From the NCBI GenBank assembly GCA_000388065.2, contig KB932206.1: a DNA stretch of 64,000 nt; one strand, written 5' to 3'. A program made the translations under genes and the position numbers. The notes beneath the pieces were generated by a model. That model did not search any database and was not told the DNA's origin. It saw only the letters and a program-made list of their open reading frames with translations. Positions 19,851 to 63,424 of the stretch are shown in pieces; within the stretch, counting starts at the first letter, position 1; every line of letters begins with the position of its first letter. This DNA is from Fonticula alba ATCC 38817 (lineage: Eukaryota > Protista > Nucleariida).

Positions 19851-21202
19851 AAAGGGAAGGGAAGGGGGGCCCAAAGAGCGAGACAAGCAGGCTGCGCGTA
19901 CGACTGAGTGCATCAGCCTCCTGCTCAGATGGCAATGGTCCGCCCGGCAGGGGGACGGTCGATTCGGAAGCATGGCGGGAAAAGCCCCCGGAAGAAGCCG
20001 CGCGATTGATGAGCATCGACCCCGGGCCCGGGATGTCCGGCGGATGGAGGGATTGGGCCGATGCCGGGGCCGTGATCGATTCGACCAGGCTCGCCAGGGA
20101 GGAGGAGACATCGAGGTCCGGAATGAGCGGCGCCACGGCCGGCAAAGAGGTCGGGCCCGTGAGAGAAGCAGTTGCGGCGGTGGCCCCGGGGCCGGTGGCT
20201 GCGGCAGCATTACGGCCGATTGACCCGGGGGCGCGCGCGTGTGGCGAATCCGGACTGAAGGGACTCACCGGGATGGAGATGGACAAGTTCGGCCTGGAGG
20301 AGGGTGACCGCGGGGAAACCAGCGACCCGGCACTCGGCGGGCCGCCAACATTCAAGCTGGCATTGGAGTTGGAAAGCTTGAGGGGGGCCGGCGTCGAGGA
20401 CAGGCGCCGTGGAAGGGACGCCGGAGCAGGCGACGGGGCCAGGGCGGCGGCGGCGGCGGCGGCTGCTGCTGGTGCCTGGGTGTTGGTCGGGCTGATGGGC
20501 CGTGGCGGAAGGATGGTCGAGGCGTCGGTGGGTCGACGCTTGCTGGCCCCGGCCCGGCGGTCCTTGGCCGTTTTCCGGTCCGATGGCCCGGGGGATGAAG
20601 ACGTCTTGGAGGTGGTCAGGCCGGCCTTGGCCTCGCGACGGAGGCGTCGCTGCAGGGCCAAGTAGTGCTGATCGCAGTAGGGGCGATTTTCATGGCGATA
20701 GAAGGGCCGATTGGCCAGGGAGATCCGACAGTCCGAGCTACGAAGACCCAAAGGCGAGCCGTGACCGAGGGGCGAGGGGAGGGGGGGGGGGGGGGGGGGG
20801 GGGGAAGGAGGGAGGCGCGAAGAGGCAAGGCAAGGAGGGCAGCCGGGCCGGGGCAAGCACACAAGAGGGCGGGAGTGGTTAGCCCAGGAAGTCCATGGCC
20901 CGCACACAAGAGACAGCCACTTGGCCGGGGCAGAGCGTCACGAACCAGGCAAAGTGATCCGGGTGCCAGGTTTCCCCCAGAGCATGGACAATGCGATCAA
21001 TGATGGGCTGCTGGCAGCCGAAGCAAATGAGAAACCCGTTGGCATGGTCGGAGGAGCCGGAATCGGGGCCGCTGGTCGAGGAGTCCCCGGTCACCGGGGA
21101 GGAAGCCAGCGCCGATGGCGGCGTCGGCAGGGCAGGGGCATCACGGCCGACGGACGCACCGGCACCGTCGGCAAACGGCTGCGTGAGGGCGTCGGTCGAC
21201 AT
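17416..21202 (-). CDS. LIM-domain protein with long Ser/Ala/Pro-rich disordered regions and a ~120-aa coiled coil; exons 21202-20946, 20737-19902, 19739-17416 (~1138 aa; the true start may lie in the adjacent gap)
   Basis: Splicing 20945..20738 builds a complete LIM: CFGC-x17-HPDHFACSDC-x17-CDQH. Intron 19901..19740 (GTACGC donor, GACTGAC branch, TAG acceptor; phase 1 on both sides) joins the LIM ORF to the 776-aa ORF, whose listed start is only TTG. A heptad-rich segment lies at ~18575-18940. Confidence 0.8.
19799..19848 (+). repeat. (GT)n microsatellite inside the LIM-gene intron
   Basis: Direct reading. Confidence 0.85.
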
Positions 21203-21221
21203 GCTGCCTTCTCGGGGGGGG

Positions 21222-22056
21222 NNNNNNNNNNNNNNNNNNNNNNNNNNNNNNNNNNNNNNNNNNNNNNNNNNNNNNNNNNNNNNNNNNNNNNNNNNNNNNN
21301 NNNNNNNNNNNNNNNNNNNNNNNNNNNNNNNNNNNNNNNNNNNNNNNNNNNNNNNNNNNNNNNNNNNNNNNNNNNNNNNNNNNNNNNNNNNNNNNNNNNN
21401 NNNNNNNNNNNNNNNNNNNNNNNNNNNNNNNNNNNNNNNNNNNNNNNNNNNNNNNNNNNNNNNNNNNNNNNNNNNNNNNNNNNNNNNNNNNNNNNNNNNN
21501 NNNNNNNNNNNNNNNNNNNNNNNNNNNNNNNNNNNNNNNNNNNNNNNNNNNNNNNNNNNNNNNNNNNNNNNNNNNNNNNNNNNNNNNNNNNNNNNNNNNN
21601 NNNNNNNNNNNNNNNNNNNNNNNNNNNNNNNNNNNNNNNNNNNNNNNNNNNNNNNNNNNNNNNNNNNNNNNNNNNNNNNNNNNNNNNNNNNNNNNNNNNN
21701 NNNNNNNNNNNNNNNNNNNNNNNNNNNNNNNNNNNNNNNNNNNNNNNNNNNNNNNNNNNNNNNNNNNNNNNNNNNNNNNNNNNNNNNNNNNNNNNNNNNN
21801 NNNNNNNNNNNNNNNNNNNNNNNNNNNNNNNNNNNNNNNNNNNNNNNNNNNNNNNNNNNNNNNNNNNNNNNNNNNNNNNNNNNNNNNNNNNNNNNNNNNN
21901 NNNNNNNNNNNNNNNNNNNNNNNNNNNNNNNNNNNNNNNNNNNNNNNNNNNNNNNNNNNNNNNNNNNNNNNNNNNNNNNNNNNNNNNNNNNNNNNNNNNN
22001 NNNNNNNNNNNNNNNNNNNNNNNNNNNNNNNNNNNNNNNNNNNNNNNNNNNNNNNN
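21222..22056. other. Assembly gap (N), may hide the 5' end of the LIM gene
   Basis: Run of N. Confidence 1.
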
Positions 22057-26842: not shown

Positions 26843-28046
26843 CCCCCCCCCCCCCCCCCACCGACGCTCCCCAAGTGGGCCAGCGCGCCCGGGTCGCCGG
26901 GCCCACGCGCGACTCCCCCCCCTGGCCCCTCGAGCTCATTATTGGTGATTGGCCCCCCACGCGGGGGCGCGCACACCCAGGCGAGCGCTTCCCCTCCCCC
27001 TGGCCCCGCAGCAGGGGGGGTGGGGACCGGCCCCTCCACACGCGGGCGGCTCGTCCGGTCATGCTGGGCGACGATTGCCCAGCCGCACAGACCGACAGAA
27101 TACGAGCTGGCCCCGGGCCCACGCGAGTGTGGGAGGCACTGCGCACGAGGCAGGAACCAACAGGTGCGTGTGTGTGTGTGTGGGGTGGGGGGGGGGGTGA
27201 CATCCGTGTCTCGGCCCCGCCCCCGTACTCCAAGCTGGGCACCTCAAAAGGCGCGTGGTTCGTGCAATCCAAACGCCTCCCCCGGCACATGTGCTGTCCG
27301 GGAGACGGGCCAGGGGGCGGGCCGGACCGTTCTTGCATCCCCGGTTGGCGGTGCTCAAGTGGCAGGACGTGTATGCCTGCTTTTTAAATTCGAGTTTAAA
27401 ATAGGCTCTCACCGAAGATGCCCCTAGGGCAATCAGAAGACAAGGGTCGTCACACCCGGGGAATCACGCCGCATGCCACACACAGAGTGCATTCCAGGCG
27501 AAACGCCATTTACGCACATGGAGGGTTTTTGCGATCTCTCCTCGGGCTCCGTCGCCTGGTGGAGGAATGAGGAGCCGCACTATTCCCCGCGACGAGCCTG
27601 CGCCCACCCCCGTCCCTGAGCATCCGTCGAAGGGTTTTCTTGCCAACCCTCCGCCACTCCGGCACCGATCCAACTGGCGCCTCACCTTCCACCGTCTCTC
27701 TCTCTCTCCCTTGCCCTCGTCCCGGCCCCCTGTATCCCCGCCATGCTCTCTTTTGTCTTGCTTGGTCCGGGCCCAGGCGGCAGAGTGTGCTATTCAACGG
27801 AGCCAACAGGCGATGGGGAATATTCTAGCCGCACAGATCAGGATGCTCGGGGTGGTTCCCCCCCCCCCCCGGCTGGCCGCGTTTCCTTGCCTCTGCCGCG
27901 GGAGGAGGAACGGCGGGGGGGCGGCAGTCTCACTGGCCAGAGCGTCGTCACCCGTTTTCCTCGGGGCCCGGCCGTGTAACGCGCCCGGGCAGGCTGCCCG
28001 CCCACCATCCCTCGGCCGGGGGCTGGAGAGCTTGCCNNNNNNNNNN

Positions 28047-28141
28047 GGCATGAATCACCGCACACGCGCTGACAAGGGGGCCCAAGTTCGGCCGGCATGG
28101 ACGCCGCACGCGGAGCCCGAAAAGAGGTCGCCCAGCCCCCC
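28047..28141 (+). repeat. 95-bp direct repeat, copy 2 (starts at a 10-N gap)
   Basis: Identical to 26456-26550. Confidence 0.9.
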
Positions 28142-28675
28142 AGGCACGCTTCCCGGAGGCGCTTTGCCTGCTCCTCCCGCCCCCCCCCCCCCCCCCCCCC
28201 CCTTGCTCCTTTTTTGTTTCCCTTCCCATGCGCAAGCGCGCGAACGCCCAGGAGCAGGACACTTTCGTCACTCCGTGGATAAATGAGCCCTTCACGTGCA
28301 CGGGTGCCGGCCTCAGGCGCCGGAGGGGCCCGGGCGGCCCGTGTCGCGTCCGTTCCCCCCCCCCCCCCGGGGGGGGCGGGTCCCCCGATTGCCTCGCGTA
28401 TTTCTACAATCACCAAGTGTCCTCGAAGGATGCGTCCGCCGGCAACGTGCAAGGCGCAGGGGGGCAGGCGTCGGGTCAATCACGGCCCCATGCACTAATC
28501 TGCGGCGGGCAATGCGCCGGCCGCTGGGCGGCATTTCGTCTGGCGCGCACACATACACACACACACGCACAGGAAATAAGGCGGCCTCCAACGCGCCTCC
28601 CTGTCCTTCCTGTCGGTCTCCCTCGGCCTCTTCCCCGGCCCCTTGCCCTATTGATGGAATCCCCCCCCCCCCCCC

Positions 28676-29656
28676 NNNNNNNNNNNNNNNNNNNNNNNNN
28701 NNNNNNNNNNNNNNNNNNNNNNNNNNNNNNNNNNNNNNNNNNNNNNNNNNNNNNNNNNNNNNNNNNNNNNNNNNNNNNNNNNNNNNNNNNNNNNNNNNNN
28801 NNNNNNNNNNNNNNNNNNNNNNNNNNNNNNNNNNNNNNNNNNNNNNNNNNNNNNNNNNNNNNNNNNNNNNNNNNNNNNNNNNNNNNNNNNNNNNNNNNNN
28901 NNNNNNNNNNNNNNNNNNNNNNNNNNNNNNNNNNNNNNNNNNNNNNNNNNNNNNNNNNNNNNNNNNNNNNNNNNNNNNNNNNNNNNNNNNNNNNNNNNNN
29001 NNNNNNNNNNNNNNNNNNNNNNNNNNNNNNNNNNNNNNNNNNNNNNNNNNNNNNNNNNNNNNNNNNNNNNNNNNNNNNNNNNNNNNNNNNNNNNNNNNNN
29101 NNNNNNNNNNNNNNNNNNNNNNNNNNNNNNNNNNNNNNNNNNNNNNNNNNNNNNNNNNNNNNNNNNNNNNNNNNNNNNNNNNNNNNNNNNNNNNNNNNNN
29201 NNNNNNNNNNNNNNNNNNNNNNNNNNNNNNNNNNNNNNNNNNNNNNNNNNNNNNNNNNNNNNNNNNNNNNNNNNNNNNNNNNNNNNNNNNNNNNNNNNNN
29301 NNNNNNNNNNNNNNNNNNNNNNNNNNNNNNNNNNNNNNNNNNNNNNNNNNNNNNNNNNNNNNNNNNNNNNNNNNNNNNNNNNNNNNNNNNNNNNNNNNNN
29401 NNNNNNNNNNNNNNNNNNNNNNNNNNNNNNNNNNNNNNNNNNNNNNNNNNNNNNNNNNNNNNNNNNNNNNNNNNNNNNNNNNNNNNNNNNNNNNNNNNNN
29501 NNNNNNNNNNNNNNNNNNNNNNNNNNNNNNNNNNNNNNNNNNNNNNNNNNNNNNNNNNNNNNNNNNNNNNNNNNNNNNNNNNNNNNNNNNNNNNNNNNNN
29601 NNNNNNNNNNNNNNNNNNNNNNNNNNNNNNNNNNNNNNNNNNNNNNNNNNNNNNNC
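28676..29656. other. Assembly gap (N); smaller gaps also at 16463-16472, 28037-28046 and 39164-39186
   Basis: Runs of N. Confidence 1.
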
Positions 29657-30766
29657 CGCCCCATCCGGCCTTCTATTTAGCTGGGCCAAGTGGATTGAGT
29701 GGGACACATTCCATCCCGCACGCTAGAATGCTGTGGAGAGGATGCACAGACACCCATGCGCACCATAGGTCGTCGAGGGGGGGGGGGGGGGGGATATTTA
29801 TGCATATATCCATCCCCCTGACTCGCGGTCCAACTGCCGGGATCGGCGCTCCCGCCCTGGCCCAGAGGGCGCGGTTTCCCGCTAGATGGTTCCATGTTCC
29901 CCCCCGCTCCCCCCCCCCGCTTGGCCTTGCCCCTAGCGCTTGAGAACCACCGCCGGATACGCATGCATGCAGGTGAACACGTACACATGCCGCCCCCACC
30001 CCATGGGCCTTGCCTTGCCGGGGGTGGCCCTTGTGGCGGGGCTTCCCCGGCTCCTGCCCAGAGAAAGGACATACGTAGCCGGCCGAGGCTTTTGTCCCCG
30101 GGGCCCCCTCGAGGTCCTCTCTCCCAGCCGCATCTTGCGTCCGTCTTTCCTGCTGCTCCGGATCCACGGGCCGGCAATGTTACTTGCCGTGTGGGCTGTG
30201 GGATGCGCGCTCGCTCAAGTTTGCGCCCCCCCCCCCCCCTCTCTCTCCCTCTCTCACCCCCTCATGGTCTGGTACTCTGCTCGTCGCGGCCTCCCAGGCG
30301 CACATGCAGAGATGTACAGACCGCCTGAAGAGTCGCCTCCAAGGCAGGGCTCAGCCCTGGGGCGGAGCTGGTGGTAACCGGAATTATCATTGTCGCGAGC
30401 AATCCTCCGAGGCCTTGATAGACTTCCTCCTTTCCCCCCCCCCCTTCCCCCTCCCCCTCCCCTTCCCTGCTTCTGAGTTCCCCTCAGTAGCACACCACCC
30501 CTTCCACAGCCGTATGCCCCTTCATCTCGCCCTCGCCCCCTTCCTCTTCGCCTCCCTTCGCCGTCCCAAGACCCCCTCATGCCGCTCTGGACGGCTGCCC
30601 TGCCCCTCTACACTCACGCGGACGAGGGAGGTAGAGGGAAAGGGAGACACCTGTCTCCCGTCCTATCTTATTCTATCACTCTTCCTCCCCCCCCCCCCCC
30701 CCCCCCCCCCCCGGCCAAGCCCTTCCGCCCCCCCCCCTCTGACCCCCCCTTTCTCCGAATCAGACA

Positions 30767-52049: not shown

Positions 52050-54370
52050 GGTGGTCGGCAGCAAGGGGAAGGTTCTGCAGGCCCGGCGCCTGGGCGAGAA
52101 AGTGGCCAGGCAAGGGGTGAGATGGGGGAAAGAAAATTGCACAGGCGTGGAAGGCCCCGAGGCGCAGGACGGCAAGTTTTGGGGGGCCTCTTCTTCCTTT
52201 CCAAAGCCCCCCCCCCTTCGTCACATGCGGCGGGTCGTTGCTGGAAAAAAACGCACCGCGAGACGGCTGAGAGAAGTGGCTATGGGTTCGGGCAAAAAAG
52301 AGAGAGCGAGAGAGAGAGAGCAAGAGAGAGAGAGAGAGAGAGCGAGCGAGGGATGTTCTGAGACTGGCCAGACGCTTAGGCGAGCAGAGAGACAGGCAGC
52401 GAGGGAGGGGGTGGGGCAGGCGGGTAGGGGGGCGAAGGGTGTGTGTTTTCTGGGCTGGCAGGAAAAAGGAGTGCCGGACGAGGGCCGGAGGCACGGCCGT
52501 GGGGTTCCTTTTAGCGCCACCCTGGGGCCGGCTGGCAGAGAGTACCTCTGGAAGGCGGACCGGGGGATGGATGTGCCTCAGGATCCGTGCCGCTGTCGGC
52601 GTTGGAGGGCCTATTTACTTGCATGGCCGCCTGGCTGCGCGTCCGTGTGTCTGCGCATCTGGGCGTCCGCACGTTCATGTGCCTGTGTGTGTGTGTGTCG
52701 GCGTGTCGGCGTGTCGGGCTTGTGGCCAAATATGCCCATGCGCCGCAGGGCCTGTGTGCCGGTGTACACGGCAAATTCATGGCCAGAGGAGCTTGGAGCT
52801 CAAGCCCCCGGCGGCGGAATGTGCCTGGCCCGAGCTCGTGGAATGGCGGGGGCCTGGGTTGGCTGGCGCGGCGCAAGGCTTTCCCAGCTCATGTCTGCCG
52901 GGAAGGGGCTCGCAGGCGATGCGTATCCCCTCCAAAGCAAGCTCGCCCCCCCCCCCCCCCTCCCCGAGATCGGATTTCCTGCTCTCCTGTTGGTATGCTC
53001 CCCTGCCCGCCCCCCGCACGAGGGACACCAGGACCAGCTTTGGAACGCCTACACCTGCCGACACGAAGGCCGGGTAAAAAAAAATAGGCCGCGATGGGCG
53101 ATCCCATCAGCTGGCCTCCGGCCACTGCGGCCAATTCAAACGACCAGGGATTGTGGGCTGTAGGTAACTGCCCCGCACCCCGTAAACGCCATGTCCGCTC
53201 CAGATCGGCGGGGGCACACCGGCAGGGAGGAGGGGGGACGGGAGCCAGGATGTAGCCTCATGTGCCATCTCCCCCGGACCCAGGGATTCGGCACTTGGTT
53301 TCCGGTGGGGGGATCTTCCAAAAGCAAGATCCCTTCCCGACTCACGGCCCCTGCACTCTCGTGGCCCCTGGGTCGCGGGGCGGCTTCTGCACGCCCACGG
53401 AGGCGCTCGACCCCAGGTGGGCAGTGGAGCATGTGCCCCAGGCTGCCCCAGGCGGAAGGCAGATGCACCAGCGGGGCTCTCTTCCGGGAAAAGAAAGGAA
53501 AAATGTGAAGAACAAGCTCGGGGACGCCCAGCCCCAACCCCACAACGAGGAGTTACATAATGTTAATCGGCATCGTGTGACCACGTGCATGGTGTGGCGC
53601 TCCGCCCCGGGGCGTGATCCATCAGCAGGCGGTGGCGCCAGCCCGGAGGATAAGTGCCAACCCTCGTCGGCCAAGAGCCCCGTCCCCCCCAAGTGCGGGA
53701 CATTTGCGGGGGGGGGGCCCTGGCGCGGTGCAATTCCGGAAGAAAGCCGGCGCCGCAATGGTGTCGTGAGAGGCAGGGAACCAGCGGCATACCGCAATCC
53801 GGGCGTGTACCCCTGAGTCTCTTCGACATTTATGTCGGCCTGGCGATCTCCATCGAAAAGCGGGCCTCGGCCGCGGCCTCGCGAGGGGCCAGGGCGGGGG
53901 CCTCCATGCCGGTGGCGACACGATTGTGGGCTCTTCTATTTGGCAGGCCGCGGTTCCCGGCGGATGGACCCGGGGACCGCAGGTACAAAGCCCCACCTTG
54001 CTGGTGAATATTCGCAAAGTCCCGGCCACCACACATCCCTCAACAAAAGCACCGTTGCTCTGTTCTCCCCGGCCCTTGGCTCCCTCTTGGCCATTGGCTT
54101 GCCGCCATCGGACCTCTGGCTGCTAGACTCCACGTTGTGAGTCAATTAGAACGCGTGGAGGAGGGGGCCCCCACCACGCCCACCGGTGGGCGTGGACTCG
54201 CGGCAGGTGTGACCCCGGTGCCTGGTGGCTGCTTTGTGAAGTGCCCCGGGTCGGTGGAATGGCAGGGCCCTTTTGCGCCAAGCCCCAAGGCGAGACTGCG
54301 TGGCGCCTGGGGCGGGCCCCTGTGTGGGGCTTGATCCAAAAAGAAAGGGCCATCCGCTCGTGGGGGGGGG

Positions 54371-54374
<4 letters not shown>

Positions 54375-54418
<44 letters not shown>

Positions 54419-54441
54419 GGGAGAGGGAGAGGGAGAGGGAG
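54375..54441 (+). repeat. (GA)n/(GAGG)n microsatellite upstream of the NTase-ankyrin gene
   Basis: Direct reading. Confidence 0.85.
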
Positions 54442-54688
54442 ATCCTTCGCGGCCCGAGCGGCCCTTCGGAGGCGCCGCTGGTAAGGGGAGCGCCCTTCAA
54501 GGCAGAAGCCCCAGACAGAGTCAGTAGCCGCGAGCAAATGAAAAGGCACCCTAATGGCATCTCGTGAGGCTTGGCCCCGAGGGGGAACGAAGGCCACCCG
54601 GGTGAGATGCTGCTGCCTCGGCGGGGGCGTCCCGCAACCGGCGGCGGGGTGACCTTTTGTCATGGACGCGCTGCCATGCCGCTTGCTC

Positions 54689-54694
54689 TATAAA
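54689..54694 (+). promoter_or_regulatory. Candidate TATA box (TATAAA) of the NTase-ankyrin gene
   Basis: CTATAAAG about 100 nt upstream of the ATG at 54791 in a very GC-rich context. Confidence 0.35.
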
Positions 54695-54790
54695 GGCCAC
54701 CACAGGCGGCAGCCAGCAAAACACCACTTGGCCAGCATCCCCCCACTGTAGGAGCACGCTTCCTTTCCCCCCCCCCCCCCTTTTCCTGCC

Positions 54791-57700
54791 ATGGACACCA
54801 GCACCCTGTCCACGCCGACGGCCGATCTTTTGGCCGACTACCTGGCCCTCTTCACCCGGCAGGATGTCCGGGCTGATGTTGGCACACGACTGCAGGTGCC
54901 CTTCCCCCCAACGCCATGTTGTCCTTTTGTCCGCGCCGGCTGATCGCATGCACCCTCGCTAACATCCCGGCTTGACCTGGTGCTCCCCCGCCCCCCGGCC
55001 GGTTAGGATCTGATCGATCGGGAAAACCATTGCCGCATGCTGTTCGCGCAGGAGCGCGATCATGCCCACCTGCAGGACCCTCATTTGATGCTGATCCCCC
55101 TCTTCGGCCAGCCAGCAGGTAGCATGGTGGCCCGTGACGCCGGCGAGGAGGCGGCCCTTTCGCCGGACGGACTGCCACTCTACCGGCTGATGTTCGCCGA
55201 GACCGCCGAGACCCGGCGCTTTCGCAAGGCCCCCGGCGACCCGGTCATCACCGGCTCCCTGGATGCCTTCCACCGGAACTGGGAACTTTTCACGGAAAAT
55301 TCCCTGCGCTATGTCAAGTGGGATAATGTGGTGGCGGCCGGGGGGTCCGTCTTGGCGTGCCTGATGCCGGTCTTCGACCCGGACACGCCGAGCACCTTCC
55401 TGCCGGATGCCGACGTCGCCTTCGGCCAGGTGGCCCGAGCCCGAGCCGCCATGCGGGTGGATGCATCGGTCCGGACGCTGAATGGCGCCACGGTCACCAG
55501 CCCGGGCGAGGCCATCTCCCCCAAGCGCCAGCGGTACATCTACCACAACATGCTGTACCGGTCGTCGGACATTGACCTCTTCATCTATGGTCTGGATGAG
55601 GAGGCCGCCCGGGCCAAGCTCATCGAGCTGTATGAGGCCATTTCCAATGCCATCCCCCATGCGGCGCTGGTCTTCCGGTCGAAGTATGCCGTTTCGATTG
55701 TCAGCCAGTTCCCCTACCGGCACATCCAGATTGTCCTCCGCCGGTATGCCTCCCCGGCCGAGGTGCTCATGGGCTTCGATGTGGACTGCTCCGGGGTGGC
55801 CTTCGACGGCCGGCAGGTGTATGCCGTGCCGCGTGCCCATGCGGCGCTGGTGTTCCAGCGCAACACCATCGACATGTCCCGGCGGTCGCCCTCCTACGAA
55901 ACCCGACTGGCCAAGTACGCGGCCCGGGGGTTCGCCGTGCGGGCCCCCCACTTCGACCTCGATCGCGTGGATCCCCAGATCCTGGAACGGCCCCTCGACC
56001 GGGTCCAAGGCTTGGCCCGGCTGCTGGTGCTGGAGCGCCTCCGGTCGCCGGTGGCCCTTCAGACCTTCCGAACCGAGCAGCGCCTCCGCCGGATGCGTGT
56101 CGAGTCGACGGACGCCCAGTCGGCCGATGGGCTGGCTGGCGGCCTGGCCGGCAACCTCCCGGCCGATGATGACATTGACAATGGCCGCGGCGAGGGGGGC
56201 TATCTTCGCCAACAAATCGAAAGTCGCCTCAGTCAAGACGCCTTCCTGCGGGACCGGCTCCATGGGAGCCACATCAGCGAGCTGTCGGACTATGCCACGG
56301 TCTTCCTGCCCTGGGGCCCGGACTGGAATGCCAAAAACATCCGCGACCTGATGGAGGGCAAGGACTCCATGCTGAACTCGCCCTGGTTCGACCGGGGCAA
56401 GACATACCACACCCATCCCTGCTTCATCGGCCGCATGGCCACCATCATGGAGGACTGTTGTGGCTTTTGCCCGGCCTTCCCGGCGGACTTCGACATCGCC
56501 GAGTCCCCCTTCGTCCACGGGCCGTTGGTCTTCTTGGCGGATGACCCCGGCCGCCAGGCCATCGGCTCCTTCCGGCCCATCACCGACGGCGATTGGATGA
56601 CATCGGCCCTCCTTGACCCGGCGGCCGACTTGCTGGCCCAGGCCGCGGCGACCGGCGACCTGGGCCTCTTCCACCGGGCGCTGGAGCTGGAGTCGGCGCG
56701 TGTGGCGCATGACCGGGCGGCGGCCCTCGCCGGCCAGGCCGCCGCCGAGCGGATCGCCGCCGCCGCCCAGGCCGATGTGGCTGCTCGGTTGGCCGAGGCG
56801 TCGGCCGCCACCGCGGCCATGCTCGACCGGGGAGACCCCTACTGCGAGGTCTCCCCGGCCTGTGCCCTGGGCCGGCGCCTGGCCACCGCCCGAAGGGCCC
56901 ACACCCAGGCGCAAGAGGCGCAGGCCGCGGCCGCCCGGCGACTTGCCGATGTGCAGGGGATCCGCCTGGATGGCCGTGACTCGCTCGGCCGGACGCCCCT
57001 CATCCTGGCCGTCCTCAGTGGGAACCGGGAGATTGTTCGGGCGCTGCTGGACGCCGGGCTGCGGTCCCTGCGCGCGGCGGTGCTGCGCCTGCGGCACCCT
57101 CCCGGGCAGGCTCCCCCGGACGAGTCGGACCGCCGAGTGCTGGCCACACTGGAGCCGTGTCTGGAATTGTCGCTCCCGGAGTGCGTGCAGCCGAGTTTGT
57201 CCGAGCGCGGCGCCGATGGCCGGACGCCGCTGCACTTTGCCGCGCACTACCATCGCACGGACATTTTGGTCGACCTGCTGGAGTACAACCACCGGGTGCG
57301 GGAATTGCTGCTCGAGGCTCGGAGCCTGCGCGCTGGGCAATCACCCGAGGAGCCGGCCACGCCGGAGCCCGGGGCCTCCGCCCCCGAGGAGGACATCGAC
57401 CCTGATCAGGGCCATGCCAGCCCGGATGGCGACACCATCGACCCCGAGCTCGAGGAGATGATGGAGCTTGCCGAGTCGGACGACGACTCGGGGGACGACT
57501 CGGGGGACGATGCGCTCGACGACCGGCAGCCCACCGAGACCCCCCGTCGGGGCATGGCCGATGGCTCGGGCGGCATGGCGCCCCCCGCGCGCGAGGGCTT
57601 TGTGTCGGTCGATTGCGAGGATTGGGCCGGGCATCTGACCCCCCTGCACTATGCCATCCTCTTTGGGAGTGTGGAATGCGCGCGCGTGCTGCTGGCCCAT

Positions 57701-60700
57701 GGGGCCAGTGCGGGCCGGCCGTGCCTGCCCCTCGCCACGGGCTCCGGCGAGGCCCTGACCCCGCTGATGCTGGTGTCCTATGTCGAGGACACCGACACGG
57801 CCGTGGCCCTGGCCACCCTGCTGGTCGAGGGGGTGGACCTTGTGCCGTTGGCCGGGCAGCCGGCTGGCGGGCCAGCAGGGCGCTCGGCGCCGGCCTCCCT
57901 GGTGGACATGATGCTCACCCGGCAGCTGTCCGTGCTGGGGCTGTATGCGGCCCGGTTGCGGGCGGATTTGCTGACGGACTTCATCGGCCGGCACTTCTCG
58001 GCCGAGCAGCTGGCCCCGCTGCTGACCCATGTCACCCTGGACCAGTTGAACCCCCTCGGTCTGGCCATTCGCATCGGGTATCTCCAGGGCGGCAGCCATG
58101 GCCGCCATAGTGCGCCGGCCATTTTGCGTGATGGGCTTGGTCGTGCCCTTCGCGAGCAGCTCACCTGCGACACCGTCCGGGCGCTGCTGCGCCTGGGGGT
58201 CCCGGCTCGCGTGCTGCCCGAGCACCAGGCCGCCTCCAAGGACCTGGCCATGGCCACCTGGACCGCCGGGCTGTCCTTGCACAGTGCCCGCTGCTATGAG
58301 ACCCTCCCGGACGAGCTCCAGCCCTGCTACATGGCTCTCGAGGCCCGGCTGCCCCGGGTGCTGGAGCTCCTCCTCGAGGCGGATCCCTCGCTGGCCACCC
58401 TACGCCTTTCGGGCGTCGCACTGTGCGCCGCCCCCCCGGCCCATGCCCCTGGGCCACGGCCCCATTTTGCCGCCAGCCCACACGCCCCCGGGGATGCTGC
58501 CCGTGGGCATGCTTGCCATGACTAACACACCCGGCCTGGGCCGTGCACGGCTTGCCCTCCCCCCCCCCCAAAAAAAAATGCGACTCTCCCGGCGCCCGGC
58601 GGACGGGATGACGCCCGCCGCAGCGCGCCTGCCAAGCTCCCCGACCGTCAGCTTGTCGCCCCCGCCGGCGGGGCTTTCGCCGCACGCGCCCCCCTCGGGC
58701 ACGGGGCCGCCATGCCGGAGCCGGCCTTCCACCTGACGGACTCGGTCCTGGCCACGGCCGCCCGGATGGTGCAGGCGGCCCAGGCCGACGCCAGGGAGCT
58801 GGCCGCCCTCCAGGCTGCGGCTCCCGCGCTCTTTGACCTGCTCGAGCAGGTGTACTCCCATGCGGAACTTGGCAAGGCCACCGCCACCAATGAGGTGGCC
58901 ATCAACGCGGACGATCTGGACATTGCCGACATCCGGGCGGCCATGCGAGTCATGCGCCGGGTCATGCGCGACGAGTACCTTGCCGCGGCGGGCCTCGCGG
59001 GCCGGCCGACCGCCGGCGATGATGCCACCATGACCGACGCCACACCGGACGCCGGCAGCATGCCGGCCGGCCCCCAGGCAGACGATGATGCCGACCTGTC
59101 CGATGCCCCGGAGCCGACCATCGACCATGAGGACTATGCGGCCGGGCGGCCGGCGGTCGACCAGTTCCTCTGGCAAGCCGTCGGCAATGTGGCCGGCCTG
59201 TCGATGCCGGAGCCCCGGCTGTCGGATCGGGATGACCAGGTTTTCCGCCTGCGCAATGCCATCCGTCTGCGGAATGGCGAGCCCCGCCTGCCCCGGGCCC
59301 CGACCGGGCTGTTCGAGCCGGCGGAGCTCTTCGACCCGGCCAGCGTGACGACCATTCGCTCGGCCCTGCGCACGCGCCGGCAAATCCTGCGGGAGATCCA
59401 CCGCCACGAGGCGCTTCCGGCCGCCGGCGCGGCCCCGGGCCCCGGGGTGATGGTGACGCTTTTGCTGCACGACCTGGCCGTGGTCAATTTCATGGTCGGC
59501 CTGCCGGCCGGCGATCGACTCGACGACCGGGACCCGGCGCGCGGCGAATCCGGCCCGCTCGCGGCCGCCGACCACCCGCCAGGCCCCCTGCATCGGTTGC
59601 GGCCTGCTGCGCGCGACGCCCTCGACCGGGTCATGGCCGCCGCATCCGACGGCCTGTTGGCCCGGCAGCGGGAGGACTTCCGCCGGCTGGGGCTCATGCA
59701 TGAATTGCTGGCCCGGCATCTTGGCACGCCGTGCACCTTCCCCCGGCGGTATCCCCCTGCCGGGGACCGGCTGGCGCCCCGGGCCAAGCGCGTGTGGGCC
59801 GCCGGCTACGACGACCCCGAGGCCCTGGCCCAGCATCTGGTTCAGGAGGTGGCATTCCGCGCGTGGGCCAAGGTCACCGTGTCGGTGGCCGAATGCCTCC
59901 TCCGGAGCCTGACCATGGAAGCCATCCAGGCGGCCCTGGACCGGGAGTTCGAAGGGCACGAGCGCATGGGCACCTGCCCCCAGCTGGGGGCCTTCATCAG
60001 GCGCCTCGCTGGCGCGATGCTGGCCCGGGTCCCGGGCACGCTGGAGGCGACCATGGGCCAGGATCGCCACACGTCCGATTGCCGGGCCTTCGGCCCGGGC
60101 AGCGGCCAGGGGCCCGGTCTGCGGGTGGGCTTCCGGGCCGGGGGCCACCCGGTCCAGGGCCCGGCCAATGAGGCCATCTACCGGGCCCTCTTTGAGGCGG
60201 TCTTCGCCGGCGACACGGCCCTTGTGGCCCACTTGACCGACACGACGGCGCACGGCCCGCGCGTGGCCCTGGTGGACAGCTGTCTGAGCGGGTCATCCAT
60301 GACCACGCCCCTTCGGGTGGCCCTGCGGTTCTTGCCCCGGCCCGCGGCGATGGTGGAGCTGCTGCTCGCGCGGCTGGCTTGCCAGTACCGGCCGCGTATC
60401 AGCGCGGCGGCGGTGCGCGTGGCCGCCGCCCAGGCGGCCGAGTCGCCCGGGGCCGCGGCCAAGCGCGCCGCCCGCATCAGCACCCTCGACTTCTTGGCCA
60501 TGACCTTCGGCGATGGGCCCGACCAGGCCCTGGACTATCTGGATGAGGAGCCGGCCCCGGGCCCGGGTGCCGGCCATGCCGGGGGGCCAAATGCCCCGGC
60601 GGATGTGCCCCCCTCGCTGGGCCTCGGCCGGGGCCGCGGCAAGATGGCCCACCGGGCCTTTGCCCGGGCTTACCGGGCCAATTGCCGGGCCCAGAGCACG

Positions 60701-63424
60701 GTGGCCAGCACTGGCGCCTCGGCGGTGGCGCGGCCCGGGCCCCGGCACGAGGATGGCCACTTGCGCTTCAGCTCGACCAGCCCGCTGGAGCATCTGGCCA
60801 CCTTGCATACCTTCATGCCGGCGGTTCGCCGCCGGCCCGGGCACACGGATGCCCAATTGGCCGGGCTCCAGCTGCTGGTGCCCCCATCATGCAAGCTGTC
60901 CCACCGGCGCCGTGCCATGATGGCCAGACATTGGCAGCACTTCCGCCATCGCCATGTGGCCCTCGGCACGGACCCGGTGCCGGGGCTGGATGAACTGGCC
61001 CGCCGCGATGACCGGTGGGCCCGGGTCCCCGGGCCGGGGGACACCCCCGGCTGGGAGTTCCTCACCCAACTGCTTTCCAGCCAGGCCCAGCCGGACGAGC
61101 CCTCCCGGCCGGAAGTCTGCATGAATCTCCTGGGCGAGACGCTCTTCCATGCGGCCGGGCTTGCCGATGGCGCGGAGGAAGCCCTGGCCCTGGTGCTGGC
61201 CATGCTCAATGGCTTGCGTTTGGTGGAGGACACCGCCACCCGGCTGGACCGGCTGGCGGCCCGGATCCAGGGCCACTTGACCTATGCCCCGGGGCTGATG
61301 CAGCTGCCCGAACGCCTGATGGCCAACATCGCCGCCGGGGCCCAGGTCAGCCCGCCGCCCATGGCCATCGCCATGGCCATGGACATGCCGCGACAGGTGG
61401 TTCTGCTGCTCCTGCGGCGCTTCGGCGGCGGGGTCAACTTCGCGCTGTGGCCCCTGCCGGCCGATGTGCCGGTGGCCGCGGCCCGGCGCCATACGGTCCT
61501 CACGCGGTCATCCAAGACCCAGCTGTTCGCCGCCCCGGCCGACGGCGGCGAGGGCCTCGCACGCTCATCCCGCAACATGCTCACCTTGGTGGCTCTGTCC
61601 GGCGGCGCGGGAGCCCGGCCGGAGGGCTTCGAGCATGTGGACCCGCCGGCCATCATGCCCGCGGGTCCCCTGGCCGAGAAGCACCCCTTGAGCTTCCTGC
61701 CCCCGGTGACGGTGGCCCTCCTGGCCGGGCATCGGGACCTGGCCGGGTGGCTGGCCGCCGACCCGGCCCCGCGACAGGCCTTCCGCGACTTCTGGCACCG
61801 CAAGCCCGCCCGCCGGCCGGTGGCCGACCTGTCGCTGGCCGGGCAATTCCCCACCGTCGACCAGCTGGCCCTGGTGGTGCCGGACACCGAGCGCAGTGTC
61901 CTGCGGGCCCTCGGCCGGGAGGTCCTCCTGGATGTGGCCCCCCTCGAGCGGGCCCTCTTCCGCCTGGACACCGTGCTCAAGGTCCCGGCCCGGCCCGGCG
62001 AGGAGCGCACCCACACGGAGTACACCACCGCCGTGGCGGCGGTCACCATGCTCAACAGCCAGCCGGCCGCGGCCCTGCTCCGGGAAATCCTCACCGCCGA
62101 GCCGTACGGCCTCGGCCCCGGCCAATTGGCCAGCCTGGCCGGCACCGGCCTGGCCCTCGATTCGCAGGCCCTGCCCAACAGCCTGGCCGCCTGGGTGGCC
62201 GGCTCGGCGGCCGACGACCTGCCCCTGGTGGCGGTTGAAAGCCACGACGTGGCCCTCAGCCCGTTGGCCCTGGCGGCCGGGCTCGGCCTCGCCGGCGCCA
62301 CGGCCGGCCTCCTGGCCGACCTCCATGCGGATCCCTCCCAGGAGGACCCCCTCCGCGGCTGGACGCCCCTGCACCATGCGGCATACTCGCACCAACCAAC
62401 AATAGCCGGGCTGCTTCTGGCCACGGTGGCCGCGCGCGCCGGGGCCGACCCCCTGGCGGCCGTGCGCCGGGCCATCTTCCATCGGAGCCCGGTGTCTGGC
62501 CTGAGCGCGGTGCATCTGGCCGCCGAGCGTGATGCCCATGGGGTCCTGCGGGAAATGGCCCTGGCCCTGGCGCGCGCACGCTTCCACACCTCGGCCCCCG
62601 ATGGGGGGCACATCCTCCGCGCCCAGGCGGAGCTCTTCCAGCCGGAACACCACACCACCTCCGGCCGGGACTCGCCGCTGCATGTGGCCCTGCGCTTCTC
62701 GCACTTCCTCCTGACCGTGGAGATGCTCCTGATTTTGGCCGTCGAAACCACGGTGGAGCATGGCCCGCGTGATGCCGGGCCCCTGGCCGATGCCCTGCTC
62801 CGGGCCATGGGCACTTCGGTCGGATGCCTGCGCCATGCCGCGATGCCGGGCGGCCCACTTGCCGGGGTCCATTGGCCAGGCCTCGCCCGGGCCCTGTTGA
62901 CGGAAAATGCCTCCGGCATCACGGTGGCCGACCATCTGTTCGCAATCGACCGGCAGGCTCTCGCGGCCAGCCACATTTCCGCACCCCACCAGCCCTTCAG
63001 CAGCCAGCCTCTGCGTTGCTCGGACCTCACCCGTGCCCTTGGTGTGGAGGCCCCGGTGGCCGGCGCCACCGGCACGGCGCACTTCACCTCCATGGGTCGG
63101 CTTTTCAGTGCCCTGCGAGTCCTGGCCAGCGTGGTGGCCTTCGCCCCCGGGGCGCCCTGTCGCTTTACCATCCGGTCATCCGACGCGCGCAGGGCCCTCT
63201 TCCATCTGGCCGACCAGACCATGCTGCAGTTTGAGCGCATCAATTCCAGCGATCACTACCAGGACGAAGAGGACCAATACTACACCGGGGCCGATCCCTC
63301 GCTGGCCAGCAATGGGCTCCTGCGGATTGCCTGCTTTGAGGGCAAGCCAGCTCGGCCGGACCTCACCGCCGAGAAGGCCATCCCCCTGCCGCTGCTCCTT
63401 CGGAACCTCCTGGTTGATGCTTGA
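54791..63424 (+). CDS. Giant (~2773 aa) protein: N-terminal Pol-beta-superfamily nucleotidyltransferase-like domain plus dispersed ankyrin repeats; exons 54791-54895, 55007-58422, 58624-63424
   Basis: VVAAGGSVLACL...SSDIDLFIYG, RHIQIVLR, GFDVDCS, SRRSPSYETRLAKYAARGF. Ankyrin cores: LGRTPLILAVLSGNREIVRALLDAG, GRTPLHFAAHY, LTPLHYAILFGSVECARVLLAHGA, GWTPLHHAAYS, LSAVHLAAER, DSPLHVALRF. Introns 54896..55006 (phase 0) and 58423..58623 (phase 2, GACTAAC branch) fit the frames. Confidence 0.8.

What the first reader, a model, noticed from the sequence alone, without database searches (positions are those of the whole stretch)
54791..56620. Orphan nucleotidyltransferase-like domain fused to ankyrin repeats: candidate sensor-coupled nucleotide signalling or RNA-tailing enzyme
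Seen: the N-terminal ~600 aa have hGGSh (AAGGSVL, ~55335) followed, after a ~65-aa insert, by SDIDLF (55565-55582). Then come RHIQIV, FDVDCS and RLAKYAARGF, ahead of many ankyrin repeats. Established: hG[GS]...DxD is the catalytic signature of Pol-beta-superfamily nucleotidyltransferases, which include CCA/poly(A) polymerases, OAS and cGAS/CD-NTases, and FDxxC sits where class II CCA enzymes have RDFTxN. Inference: this is an active NTase whose substrate or trigger is selected by ankyrin arrays, possibly an innate-immune or second-messenger system. From memory it resembles uncharacterised 'ankyrin repeat proteins' of fungi; I know no functional study of it, but I have not searched.
Basis: partly seen in the sequence, partly recalled or inferred. 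Interest (0 to 1): 0.82.

Follow-up and report, generated by a model that had tools for sequence, protein, structure and literature searches.

The report
Gad2-like nucleotidyltransferase fused to ankyrin repeats
The front end of a 2,773-residue Fonticula alba protein is a strongly conserved enzyme domain of the CCA-adding/poly(A)-polymerase type, related to the phage anti-defence protein Gad2; eukaryotes have inherited it for a very long time, but its substrate is unknown in any organism.

Summary
The glycine, both DxD aspartates and about 35 other residues are invariant in 63 homologues.

The gene is larger than the finding. Three exons (54791-54895, 55007-58422, 58624-63424) translate exactly to Fonticula alba H696_03796, 2,773 aa.

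AlphaFold models of the domain match class II CCA-/A-adding enzymes and bacterial poly(A) polymerase best (Z 13.0-8.4). cGAS/CD-NTase, TUTase and Pol X chains score only Z 3.4-4.4.

The domain is not an orphan. The product carries Pfam PF26128 "Gad2". A profile comparison with authentic phage Gad2 gives 91% probability, E 1e-6, with all motifs in the same order. Gad2's biochemistry is unknown, and I found no study of the eukaryotic proteins.

The family is spread across eukaryotes, its tree resembles the species tree, and giant viruses carry many copies.

Most likely it is an active, metal-dependent terminal nucleotidyltransferase acting on a nucleic-acid 3' end, with the ankyrin arrays as scaffold. 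The substrate is inferred, not shown. A signalling or immune role is neither supported nor excluded.

Two first-reader notes from this scan describe paralogues elsewhere in this genome.

Verdict: a new member of a known kind, of moderate interest.

The parts
54791..54895 (+). Exon 1, 35 codons, starting at the ATG
   Evidence: Homologues align from residue 1. The spliced CDS translates exactly to P0361.
54896..55006 (+). Intron 1, 111 nt, GTGCCC...TTAG, with an internal CTAAC
   Evidence: Read from the sequence. It holds an in-frame stop at 55004-55006. Removing it reproduces the public protein. No RNA reads were available.
55007..58422 (+). Exon 2: Gad2-type nucleotidyltransferase domain, Ala-rich helical linker, first ankyrin block
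   Evidence: The family HMM covers positions 7-885 here.
58423..58623 (+). Intron 2, 201 nt, GTGCGC...CGCAG; it removes the stop at 58523-58525 and a poly-C/poly-A run
   Evidence: One of 7 in-frame GT..AG pairs enumerated, and the one used in the public model: the junction GVAL|APAK matches P0361.
58624..63424 (+). Exon 3: middle region and second ankyrin block, ending at the stop codon
   Evidence: A search with ORF2 residues 400-1570 returns a 2,773-aa protein at 100% identity and a 2,959-aa paralogue at 44%. It is colinear with family HMM positions 1060-1132 and 1452-1622.
55256..56041 (+). Catalytic core (head and start of neck) of the nucleotidyltransferase
   Evidence: AF2 model m835aabde7223, pLDDT 84. 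VIA Z 13.0 to A-adding enzyme 3wfo, 10.8 to poly(A) polymerase I 3aql. hhalign to the Gad2 profile gives E 1.1e-6.
55334..55354 (+). Motif A, first half: AAGGSVL (G147 of the protein is invariant)
   Evidence: It lies at the end of strand 1 and the start of a helix in both models.
55379..55510 (+). Insert between GGS and DxD, absent from the 62 aligned homologues but kept in the Fonticula paralogue; low-confidence loop
   Evidence: pLDDT below 50 at model residues 130-166. Homologue cores are about 42 aa shorter. It is 62% identical in the paralogue.
55565..55582 (+). Motif A, second half: SDIDLF (D223 and D225 invariant), the metal-binding DxD
   Evidence: Foldseek aligns residue 187 onward to residue 20 onward of E. 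coli-type CCA enzymes, which puts DxD on D21/D23.
55718..55735 (+). RHIQIV strand (R273 invariant; Q276 near-invariant and shared with Gad2)
55775..55792 (+). FDVDCS (D293 and D295 invariant), the probable counterpart of class II motif B (RRD)
   Evidence: It aligns with FDFTVC of Gad2. The helix-then-strand context matches. hhalign to a single CCA sequence is not significant here.
55862..55933 (+). NTIDMSRRSPSYETRLAKYAARGF block (N, R, S, Y, E, K, Y, R, G invariant); neck helix, probable nucleotide or phosphate contacts
   Evidence: R..KY..G[FY] is shared with Gad2. It aligns to the SP..R..RFAAR..GF stretch of E. coli CCA (low confidence).
56408..56473 (+). His/Cys cluster HxH...CCxxC (H503, H505, C519, C520, C523), a probable zinc site
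   Evidence: 87-100% conserved in 63 homologues. Metal binding is inferred.
56540..56596 (+). DDPGRQAIGSFRPITDGDW, an invariant loop closing the conserved domain
   Evidence: G, Q, G, S, F, P and W are invariant. pLDDT is low at model residues 514-522. Its role is unknown.
56987..57700 (+). First recognisable ankyrin repeats, interrupted by an acidic low-complexity stretch
   Evidence: Pfam Ank_2, Ank and Ank_3 hits. TPLH-type motifs at protein residues 698, 775 and 913.
60179..60394 (+). Family-specific repeat-like block Y..LF.A..GD...TP...QY.P in exon 3
   Evidence: It matches the semi-conserved columns 1051-1150 of the full-length family alignment.
62258..62780 (+). Second ankyrin block
   Evidence: Pfam Ank_2 hit at ORF2 residues 1200-1278. 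Family HMM positions 1452-1622. Motifs located.

Best explanation
This is the 5' third of one three-exon gene, Fonticula alba H696_03796 (2,773 aa). Its first ~580 residues form an active, divalent-metal-dependent nucleotidyltransferase of the Gad2 family (Pfam PF26128), a divergent offshoot of class II CCA-adding/poly(A)-polymerase enzymes. The rest is a helical linker followed by long, degenerate ankyrin arrays.

Proposed mechanism: the GGS turn and the DxD pair (D223, D225) hold the NTP and two metal ions. The FD(V)D element and the RRSPSYE..R..KY..RGF neck helix hold the ribose, base and phosphates. An NMP is transferred, without a template, to a 3'-OH of a nucleic acid. RNA, tRNA-like or other, is more likely than DNA. 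The ankyrin arrays bind protein partners that localise or regulate the enzyme.

Shown here: the gene model, the fold, residue conservation, homology to Gad2, a species-tree-like phylogeny consistent with vertical inheritance, and stronger conservation of the catalytic core.

Inferred: catalytic activity, the acceptor, the nucleotide and the role of the ankyrins.
For: - Gene model: the spliced CDS translates exactly to the public 2,773-aa protein.
- Family membership: Pfam PF26128:Gad2 is recorded on this product, on all listed eukaryotic homologues and on homologues of authentic SPbetaL7 Gad2.
- Homology to Gad2: profile-profile comparison of the eukaryotic core with Gad2 gives probability 91%, E 1.1e-6 over 166 columns, with motifs in the same order.
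- Conservation: G, DxD, FDxD and the R/S/Y/E/K/Y/R/G block are invariant in 63 sequences.
- Models: AF2 pTM 0.80 and 0.78.
- Fold: in a Foldseek-free search of 48,161 PDB chains, the top seven are all class II CCA/A-adding enzymes or poly(A) polymerase I, Z 13.0-8.4. FAM46 follows at 7.7. Everything else is at or below 5.5. Foldseek and the VIA second look agree.
- Phage link: PHROG 1614 'nucleotidyltransferase', E 3.5e-4.
- Core under stronger constraint: the paralogue is 89% identical in the core against 30-50% elsewhere.
- Tree: Fonticula groups with fungi and the branching resembles the species tree.
- Independent literature: a preprint reached a class II nucleotidyltransferase assignment for what appear to be the pandoravirus relatives of this family, BTB-fused proteins (10.1101/2023.12.02.569716).
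Against: - No biochemical activity is known for any family member, Gad2 included.
- The PF01743 HMM does not hit, class II motifs B (RRD) and D (EDxxR) are not kept as such, and no invariant third carboxylate lies on the sheet.
- A body/tail tRNA-binding module was not shown.
- Fusions to protein-interaction modules (ankyrin, BTB, F-box, WD40, VWFA) would suit a protein-modifying enzyme equally well.
- No RNA-seq read could be laid on the gene, so expression and both introns rest on homology and the public gene model.
- I could not inspect model coordinates, so convergence of the invariant residues on one pocket was not checked.
Confidence: 0.55

Rival explanations
1. It is a protein or small-molecule nucleotidylyltransferase: an AMPylase/UMPylase, or an enzyme like LinB/ANT. 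The ankyrin array presents a protein target, which the enzyme modifies on a hydroxyl group.
For: Family members are fused almost only to protein-interaction modules: ankyrin, BTB/KCTD, F-box, VWFA, WD40 and HET. After the CCA/PAP/FAM46 group, the next structural neighbours are LinB and LnuA, which adenylylate small molecules (Z 5.5 and 4.9). Motifs B and D, which read the incoming nucleotide and RNA in CCA enzymes, have been replaced.
Against: The clear structural optimum is among RNA 3'-end enzymes, Z 8-13 against about 5. Known protein AMPylases such as Fic, GlnE and SelO use other folds or sub-families. No target is indicated.
Confidence: 0.15
2. It is a sensor-coupled nucleotide-signal synthase in a eukaryotic conflict or immune system, cGAS/CD-NTase/OAS-like. 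The ankyrins sense a trigger and the enzyme makes a second messenger.
For: The only family member with a phenotype, phage Gad2, acts in a phage-bacterium conflict. The family is hugely expanded in giant viruses: 61 BFVD hits at E<=1e-3. Some fungal members are short or carry WD40 or HET-type partners.
Against: CD-NTase, cGLR and DncV chains score only Z 3.4-4.0 against 13 for A-adding enzyme. The ankyrin-type proteins follow the species tree, and their catalytic core is under strong constraint, which is unlike fast-evolving immune genes. No receptor or effector partner is evident. Gad2 is an anti-defence enzyme, not a sensor.
Confidence: 0.12
3. It is a DNA-end nucleotidyltransferase, TdT-like, acting in DNA damage or repair.
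For: Several protist orthologues end in a BRCT domain (P0011, P0021), as do Pol lambda, Pol mu and TdT (established knowledge). Gabija, which Gad2 counters, is a DNA-nicking and DNA-end-sensing system (abstracts listed).
Against: Pol X and TdT chains score only Z 3.6-4.4. The Fonticula protein has no BRCT domain. The closest folds act on RNA.
Confidence: 0.1
4. It is a catalytically dead scaffold, a pseudo-nucleotidyltransferase kept for binding only.
For: The third carboxylate and class II motifs B and D are not conserved in canonical form.
Against: The glycine and both DxD aspartates are invariant in all 63 eukaryotic sequences and in 33 Gad2 sequences. That is the pattern of active enzymes. 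Class II enzymes are reported to work with two carboxylates (cited in 10.1101/2023.12.02.569716).
Confidence: 0.04

Closest known systems
Gad2 (Gabija anti-defence 2) of Bacillus phage SPbetaL7, Pfam PF26128
   Same: Same Pfam family. Profile-profile E 1.1e-6. Shared motif set in the same order: AGG[ST], DxD, IQ strand, FD..C, R..KY..G[FY].
   Different: Gad2 is a 400-aa stand-alone phage protein with a 12-residue GG-to-DxD spacer. The Fonticula protein is 2,773 aa, with a 72-residue spacer, extra invariant residues (second Asp of FDVD, RRSPSYE), a His/Cys cluster, the GRQ loop and ankyrin arrays. Gad2 has a genetic phenotype, anti-Gabija, but no known biochemistry. Gabija is a bacterial system, so the eukaryotic function must differ at least in its target.
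Class II tRNA nucleotidyltransferases (CCA-, CC- and A-adding enzymes) and bacterial poly(A) polymerase I (Pfam PF01743)
   Same: Best structural match, covering the head and start of the neck: Z 13.0 with 159 residues at 3.0 A for 3wfo, Z 10.8 for 3aql. GG turn and DxD in equivalent places. The SP...R..[KR][FY]AAR..GF stretch is recognisably similar to E. coli CCA.
   Different: No PF01743 HMM hit. GGxVRD is reduced to GGS. RRD becomes GFD. EDxxR is not recognisable. There is a long insert inside motif A, and no demonstrated body/tail tRNA-binding domains.
Pandoravirus 'cluster 7' BTB + nucleotidyltransferase proteins and other giant-virus paralogues
   Same: Same fold. Pandoravirus proteins hit the model at E 1e-8 to 1e-10, and the Fadolivirus ankyrin protein at E 7.5e-33. 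The preprint reports the same peculiarities: motif A kept, RRD replaced by DFD, a conserved Gln in place of the third carboxylate.
   Different: The viral copies are shorter, highly multiplied and fused to BTB, VWFA, F-box or RING. The preprint's tRNA-maturation role is itself only a prediction.
FAM46/TENT5 non-canonical poly(A) polymerases
   Same: Next-best structural neighbours (Z 7.7). Eukaryotic terminal nucleotidyltransferases.
   Different: No sequence relationship was detected. TENT5 proteins are small and have no ankyrin arrays.

Membership tests
Pol-beta-superfamily nucleotidyltransferase fold | hG[GS] at the end of strand 1 and start of a helix | tested here: met
   AAGGS: the G is invariant in 63 sequences, and Ascomycota have AGS[SA]. 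Strand-then-helix in both AF2 models.
Pol-beta-superfamily nucleotidyltransferase fold | [DE]h[DE]h on the following strand | tested here: met
   SDIDLF: both Asp are invariant and lie on strand 189-194 of the model.
Pol-beta-superfamily nucleotidyltransferase fold | Third catalytic carboxylate on a neighbouring strand | tested here: inconclusive
   No invariant acidic residue lies on strands 221-247; Q276 is near-invariant there. Invariant E287, D293 and D295 lie just after. The pandoravirus preprint also reports the carboxylate missing.
Pol-beta-superfamily nucleotidyltransferase fold | Overall alpha/beta fold matches solved members | tested here: met
   All top Foldseek and VIA matches are nucleotidyltransferases.
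Class II CCA-adding / poly(A) polymerase family (PF01743) | Head-domain architecture | tested here: met
   Z 13.0-8.4 for seven class II entries, well above the next group.
Class II CCA-adding / poly(A) polymerase family (PF01743) | Significant match to the PolyA_pol head HMM | tested here: not met
   No PF01743 hit even at E<=10; only PF18765 Polbeta at E 0.33.
Class II CCA-adding / poly(A) polymerase family (PF01743) | Motif B, RRD (ribose recognition) | tested here: not met
   The corresponding element is GFDVD, or FDFT in Gad2. Only the Asp is kept. The positional equivalence is itself only probable.
Class II CCA-adding / poly(A) polymerase family (PF01743) | Motif D, EDxxR (nucleotide templating) | tested here: inconclusive
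   The RRSPSYExR..KY block occupies the region, but the alignment to E. coli CCA is not significant (E 0.06).
Class II CCA-adding / poly(A) polymerase family (PF01743) | Body and tail domains that bind tRNA | not tested
   The full model aligns to 3wfo only over chain residues 3-311. The remaining ~150 conserved residues (His/Cys cluster, GRQ loop) have no identified counterpart.
Gad2 family (Pfam PF26128) | Hit by the family HMM | tested here: met
   Precomputed PF26128:Gad2 hit on this very product. The HMM is absent from the local Pfam copy, so I could not rerun it.
Gad2 family (Pfam PF26128) | Demonstrable homology to the founding protein, SPbetaL7 Gad2 | tested here: met
   hhalign of the eukaryotic core profile against a 33-sequence Gad2 profile: probability 91%, E 1.1e-6, 166 columns. 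Against the single Gad2 sequence only E 0.039. BLASTP is not significant.
Gad2 family (Pfam PF26128) | Inhibition of the Gabija defence system | not testable with these tools
   This is a genetic phenotype of the phage protein, and it cannot be the function in a eukaryote.
cGAS / CD-NTase / OAS signalling synthases | Closest structural similarity to the CD-NTase/Mab21 core | tested here: not met
   CdnE, DncV and cGLR chains score Z 3.4-4.0 against 13.0 for A-adding enzyme.
Ankyrin-repeat proteins | Pfam ankyrin HMM hits above threshold | tested here: met
   For exon 2: Ank_2 6.6e-16 and Ank 1.5e-15. The exon 3 hit is at threshold, 27.3 bits.

The most novel reading that the evidence does not exclude
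An ancient enzyme, vertically inherited across eukaryotes, is the cellular counterpart of the phage anti-defence protein Gad2 and of a large giant-virus gene expansion. It would carry out a chemistry not yet described, for example a dedicated modification of nucleic-acid ends or a nucleotide-derived signal. Viruses of both bacteria and eukaryotes would have repeatedly borrowed that chemistry to manipulate host surveillance.
Probability: 0.15. Interest if true: 0.8.

Novelty: new member of a known kind. Interest (0 to 1): 0.45.

Why it matters
Gad2 is one of the few phage anti-defence proteins thought to act as an enzyme, and its reaction is still unknown. This work shows that the same catalytic domain is strongly conserved in a protein found in fungi, Fonticula, amoebae, stramenopiles, green algae and metamonads, and that giant viruses have multiplied it. 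That gives many more handles on the chemistry, including fungi that can be manipulated genetically and soluble eukaryotic domains. It also raises the question of what cellular process the domain serves. For genome annotation, "hypothetical protein / ankyrin repeat protein" can be replaced by [quoted passage not shown].

Tried and rejected
- The local Pfam, NCBIfam and PDB-sequence searches of the N-terminal domain gave nothing useful. PF26128 is simply missing from the local Pfam copy.
- tblastn of the eukaryotic core against 50,697 phage genomes gave no hit. I reached Gad2 by searching with a 53-residue stretch read from the supplement of the Gad2 paper.
- A second word-index search with the core profile returned only close eukaryotic relatives.
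- hhalign of the core against the single E. coli CCA sequence was not significant: E 0.11 for the whole core, 0.06 for the part from DxD on. The residue-level equivalence of FDVDC with RRD therefore rests on Gad2's FDFTVC, the secondary-structure context and the pandoravirus preprint.
- RNA-seq: 24 runs carried the same species label, but none is shown to hold the stretch. Four were laid on 54500-60400 and gave zero reads. This is no test of expression or splicing.
- I first treated ORF 55037-58525 and ORF 58712-63424 as possibly separate genes. Neither product is on record by itself. The representative search then showed they are one gene.
- My first guess for the intron 2 donor (58503) was out of frame and was dropped after enumeration.
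- Literature searches for the gene identifiers, for PF26128 and for eukaryotic Gad2 relatives found nothing.
Full report
**The observation**

The window is GC-rich (64-74% around the finding). The ATG at 54791 opens a 35-codon exon. A 111-nt GT..AG intron (54896-55006) carries the only in-frame stop, and the frame continues from 55007. All five motifs lie at the stated coordinates:
- AAGGSVL 55334-55354
- SDIDLF 55565-55582
- RHIQIV 55718-55735
- FDVDCS 55775-55792
- RLAKYAARGF inside 55862-55933

Homologues align from residue 1 of the spliced protein.

**The gene is three times longer than the finding**

The ORF ends at a stop at 58523-58525, but a 1,570-codon ORF follows in the same frame. 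Three results show the two ORFs are one gene.
- A full-length HMM built from 60 homologues of about 1,800 aa covers positions 7-885 on the first ORF, and positions 1060-1132 and 1452-1622 on the second, in the same order.
- An exhaustive search with residues 400-1570 of the second ORF returned a 2,773-aa protein at 100% identity (match at 1603-2773) and a 2,959-aa paralogue at 44%.
- These are Fonticula alba H696_03796 (XP_009495930.1, UniProt A0A058Z521, named "hypothetical protein" or "Ankyrin repeat protein") and H696_00014.

Joining 54791-54895, 55007-58422 and 58624-63424 reproduces the 2,773-aa protein exactly. The second intron (58423-58623, GTGCGC...CAG) is one of seven in-frame GT..AG pairs I had enumerated.

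No transcript evidence could be obtained. Four RNA-seq runs with the species label gave no read on 54500-60400, which is no test.

Two earlier first-reader notes of this scan (s1-065674, s1-065561) describe NTase-ankyrin proteins of about 2,900 aa elsewhere in this genome. The second is probably H696_00014.

**The N-terminal domain: conservation**

The word-index search found 518 relatives at E<=0.001. The best are at 1e-132 to 1e-88 and 32-50% identity. They come from fungi (Dikarya, Glomeromycota, Zoopagomycota, chytrids, blastoclads), Amoebozoa, Blastocystis, a diatom, Bryopsis and Anaeramoeba. Most are about 1,700-1,900 aa and are named "ankyrin repeat protein".

In a 63-sequence alignment, 37 columns are invariant. 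They include:
- the motif-A glycine;
- both DxD aspartates;
- R273 of RHIQIV;
- both aspartates of FDVD;
- N, R, S, Y, E, K, Y, R and G of NTID..RRSPSYE.RL.KY..RGF.

Further along lie a His/Cys cluster (HxH...CCxxC, 87-100% conserved) and an invariant DDPGRQxIGSFxPITDxDW loop. Beyond residue ~560, conservation falls to degenerate ankyrin repeats.

The Fonticula paralogues are 89% identical in the catalytic core but only 30-50% identical elsewhere.

**Fold**

An AlphaFold2 model of residues 36-643 has pLDDT 80 and pTM 0.80. A model of the core alone has pLDDT 84. The only long low-confidence part of the core is an insert of about 42 residues between GGS and DxD, which the 62 aligned homologues lack but the paralogue shares.

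Foldseek against PDB and Swiss-Prot models returns only nucleotidyltransferases, led by class II CCA/A-adding enzymes, poly(A) polymerase I and FAM46. The alignment puts the DxD on D21/D23 of E. coli-type CCA enzymes.

A search that does not depend on Foldseek covered 48,161 PDB representatives:
- 3wfo (A-adding enzyme): Z 13.0, 159 residues at 3.0 A rmsd
- 3aql (E. coli poly(A) polymerase I): Z 10.8
- five further class II entries: Z down to 8.4
- FAM46B: Z 7.7
- LinB: Z 5.5
- TUTases, Pol X, TdT, CdnE, DncV and a cGLR: Z about 3.4-4.4

The domain is therefore specifically CCA/PAP-like and not cGAS/OAS-like.

**The domain is not an orphan: it belongs to the Gad2 family**

All listed homologues carry PF26128. 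The Atlas names this family "Gad2", and the precomputed annotation of this very product lists PF26128:Gad2. The model is absent from the local Pfam copy, which explains the empty scans.

Gad2 is the second anti-Gabija protein of SPbeta-like Bacillus phages. It is 400 aa. Knocking it out sensitises phage SPbetaL7 to Gabija, and AlphaFold predicted it to be a nucleotidyltransferase. No mechanism is given (10.1101/2023.05.01.538930). Reviews from 2026 still give none.

I located the authentic gene (OQ921347.1, annotated Gad2). Its homologues also carry PF26128. I aligned 33 of them.

Profile-profile comparison with the eukaryotic core gives probability 91%, E 1.1e-6 over 166 columns. The motifs pair in order:
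- AGG[ST] with AGGS
- DxD with DxD
- the IQ strands with each other
- FDFTVC with FDVDC
- R..KY..G[FY] with RLAKY..RGF

Gad2's FDFTVC resembles class II motif B (RRDFTIN-type).

**Spread and descent**

The family is abundant in giant viruses. BFVD gives 61 hits at E<=1e-3. The best is a 1,496-aa Fadolivirus ankyrin protein at 7.5e-33, and others are fused to BTB, VWFA, F-box or RING. Five GVMAG loci were recovered.

A preprint on pandoravirus "cluster 7" proteins reached the same class II assignment independently. It noted the same oddities: motif A kept, RRD replaced by DFD, no third carboxylate, a conserved Gln.

AlphaFold DB clusters add cellular relatives with ankyrin, BTB/KCTD, F-box and HET partners. 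Some protist orthologues end in a BRCT domain.

I built a quick maximum-likelihood tree of the core, rooted on Gad2.
- The two Fonticula paralogues group together (support 100).
- They fall in a clade with fungi (SH-aLRT 86).
- Within it the fungal phyla branch roughly as in the species tree.
- Stramenopile and green-algal sequences lie next, and Amoebozoa and Anaeramoeba lie outside.
- Giant-virus sequences lie within the eukaryotic diversity.
- Gad2 is on a very long branch.

This looks like old vertical inheritance with a duplication in the Fonticula lineage. It does not look like a fast-turnover conflict gene.

**Interpretation**

The invariant GG/DxD pair, the CCA/PAP-type head and neck, and the strong constraint on the core point to an active metal-dependent nucleotidyltransferase. 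By structural neighbourhood, the most likely acceptor is a nucleic-acid 3'-OH, and RNA is more likely than DNA.

The acceptor, the nucleotide and the role of the ankyrin arrays are inferences. Motifs B and D have been replaced, and the third carboxylate is missing. The partners found fused to this domain are protein-interaction modules. All this leaves room for protein or small-molecule nucleotidylylation. A signalling or immune role is neither supported nor excluded, and it is structurally the weaker analogy.

I rate "Gad2-family, class II-like nucleotidyltransferase" at about 0.9. I rate the specific terminal-transferase mechanism at about 0.55.

**Novelty**

The gene is already in public databases, as a hypothetical or ankyrin-repeat protein, and the domain is in Pfam. 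It is therefore a new member of a known kind.

I found no paper in the held library that discusses the eukaryotic NTase-ankyrin proteins or their kinship with Gad2. That kinship is the useful point to carry forward.

Noticed in passing
window 20001-22000 and 28001-30000: Two AT-rich islands (GC 0.42 and 0.34) in a window that is otherwise 56-74% GC. Their nature is unknown; they could be a transposon, an intergenic spacer or an assembly feature.
   Followed up: no
window about 54330-54420 and about 52200-52300: (GA)n-type microsatellites, read as ERERER / SLSLSL in several frames, just upstream of the gene's start.
   Followed up: no
window 58558-58578: A C11-A9 homopolymer pair inside intron 2. 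Read laying flagged 58545-58583 as a skipped repeat.
   Followed up: no
window 56408-56473: A conserved HxH...CCxxC cluster in the Gad2-type domain of the eukaryotic branch, a probable zinc site. I did not find it described for this family.
   Followed up: partly
P0011, P0021, P0005, P0012 (protist orthologues): These orthologues end in a BRCT domain at the extreme C-terminus, which hints at a link to DNA damage or phospho-protein binding. The Fonticula protein lacks it.
   Followed up: partly
P0001, P0017, P0004 (Gymnopilus dilepis): Shorter (1,024-1,442 aa), divergent paralogues without ankyrins. In one the domain is C-terminal, behind an N-terminal WD40 repeat. They form their own clade inside the Basidiomycota.
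   Followed up: partly
L001-L005 (IMG/VR giant-virus MAG contigs); L002 2734-7263: Giant-virus contigs encode proteins of about 1,500 aa with the same NTase-plus-ankyrin layout, 36-37% identical to the Fonticula domain.
   Followed up: partly
L010 (KB932206.1 596591-617224): The neighbouring called genes (890 aa on the minus strand upstream; 277 aa and 1,127 aa downstream) have no Pfam hit on record.
   Followed up: no
Sequencing-run output: Twenty-four RNA-seq runs from 2026 carry the same species label, but none is shown to hold the stretch. Four of them, read in part, gave zero reads. The label or the strain may not match the assembly.
   Followed up: no
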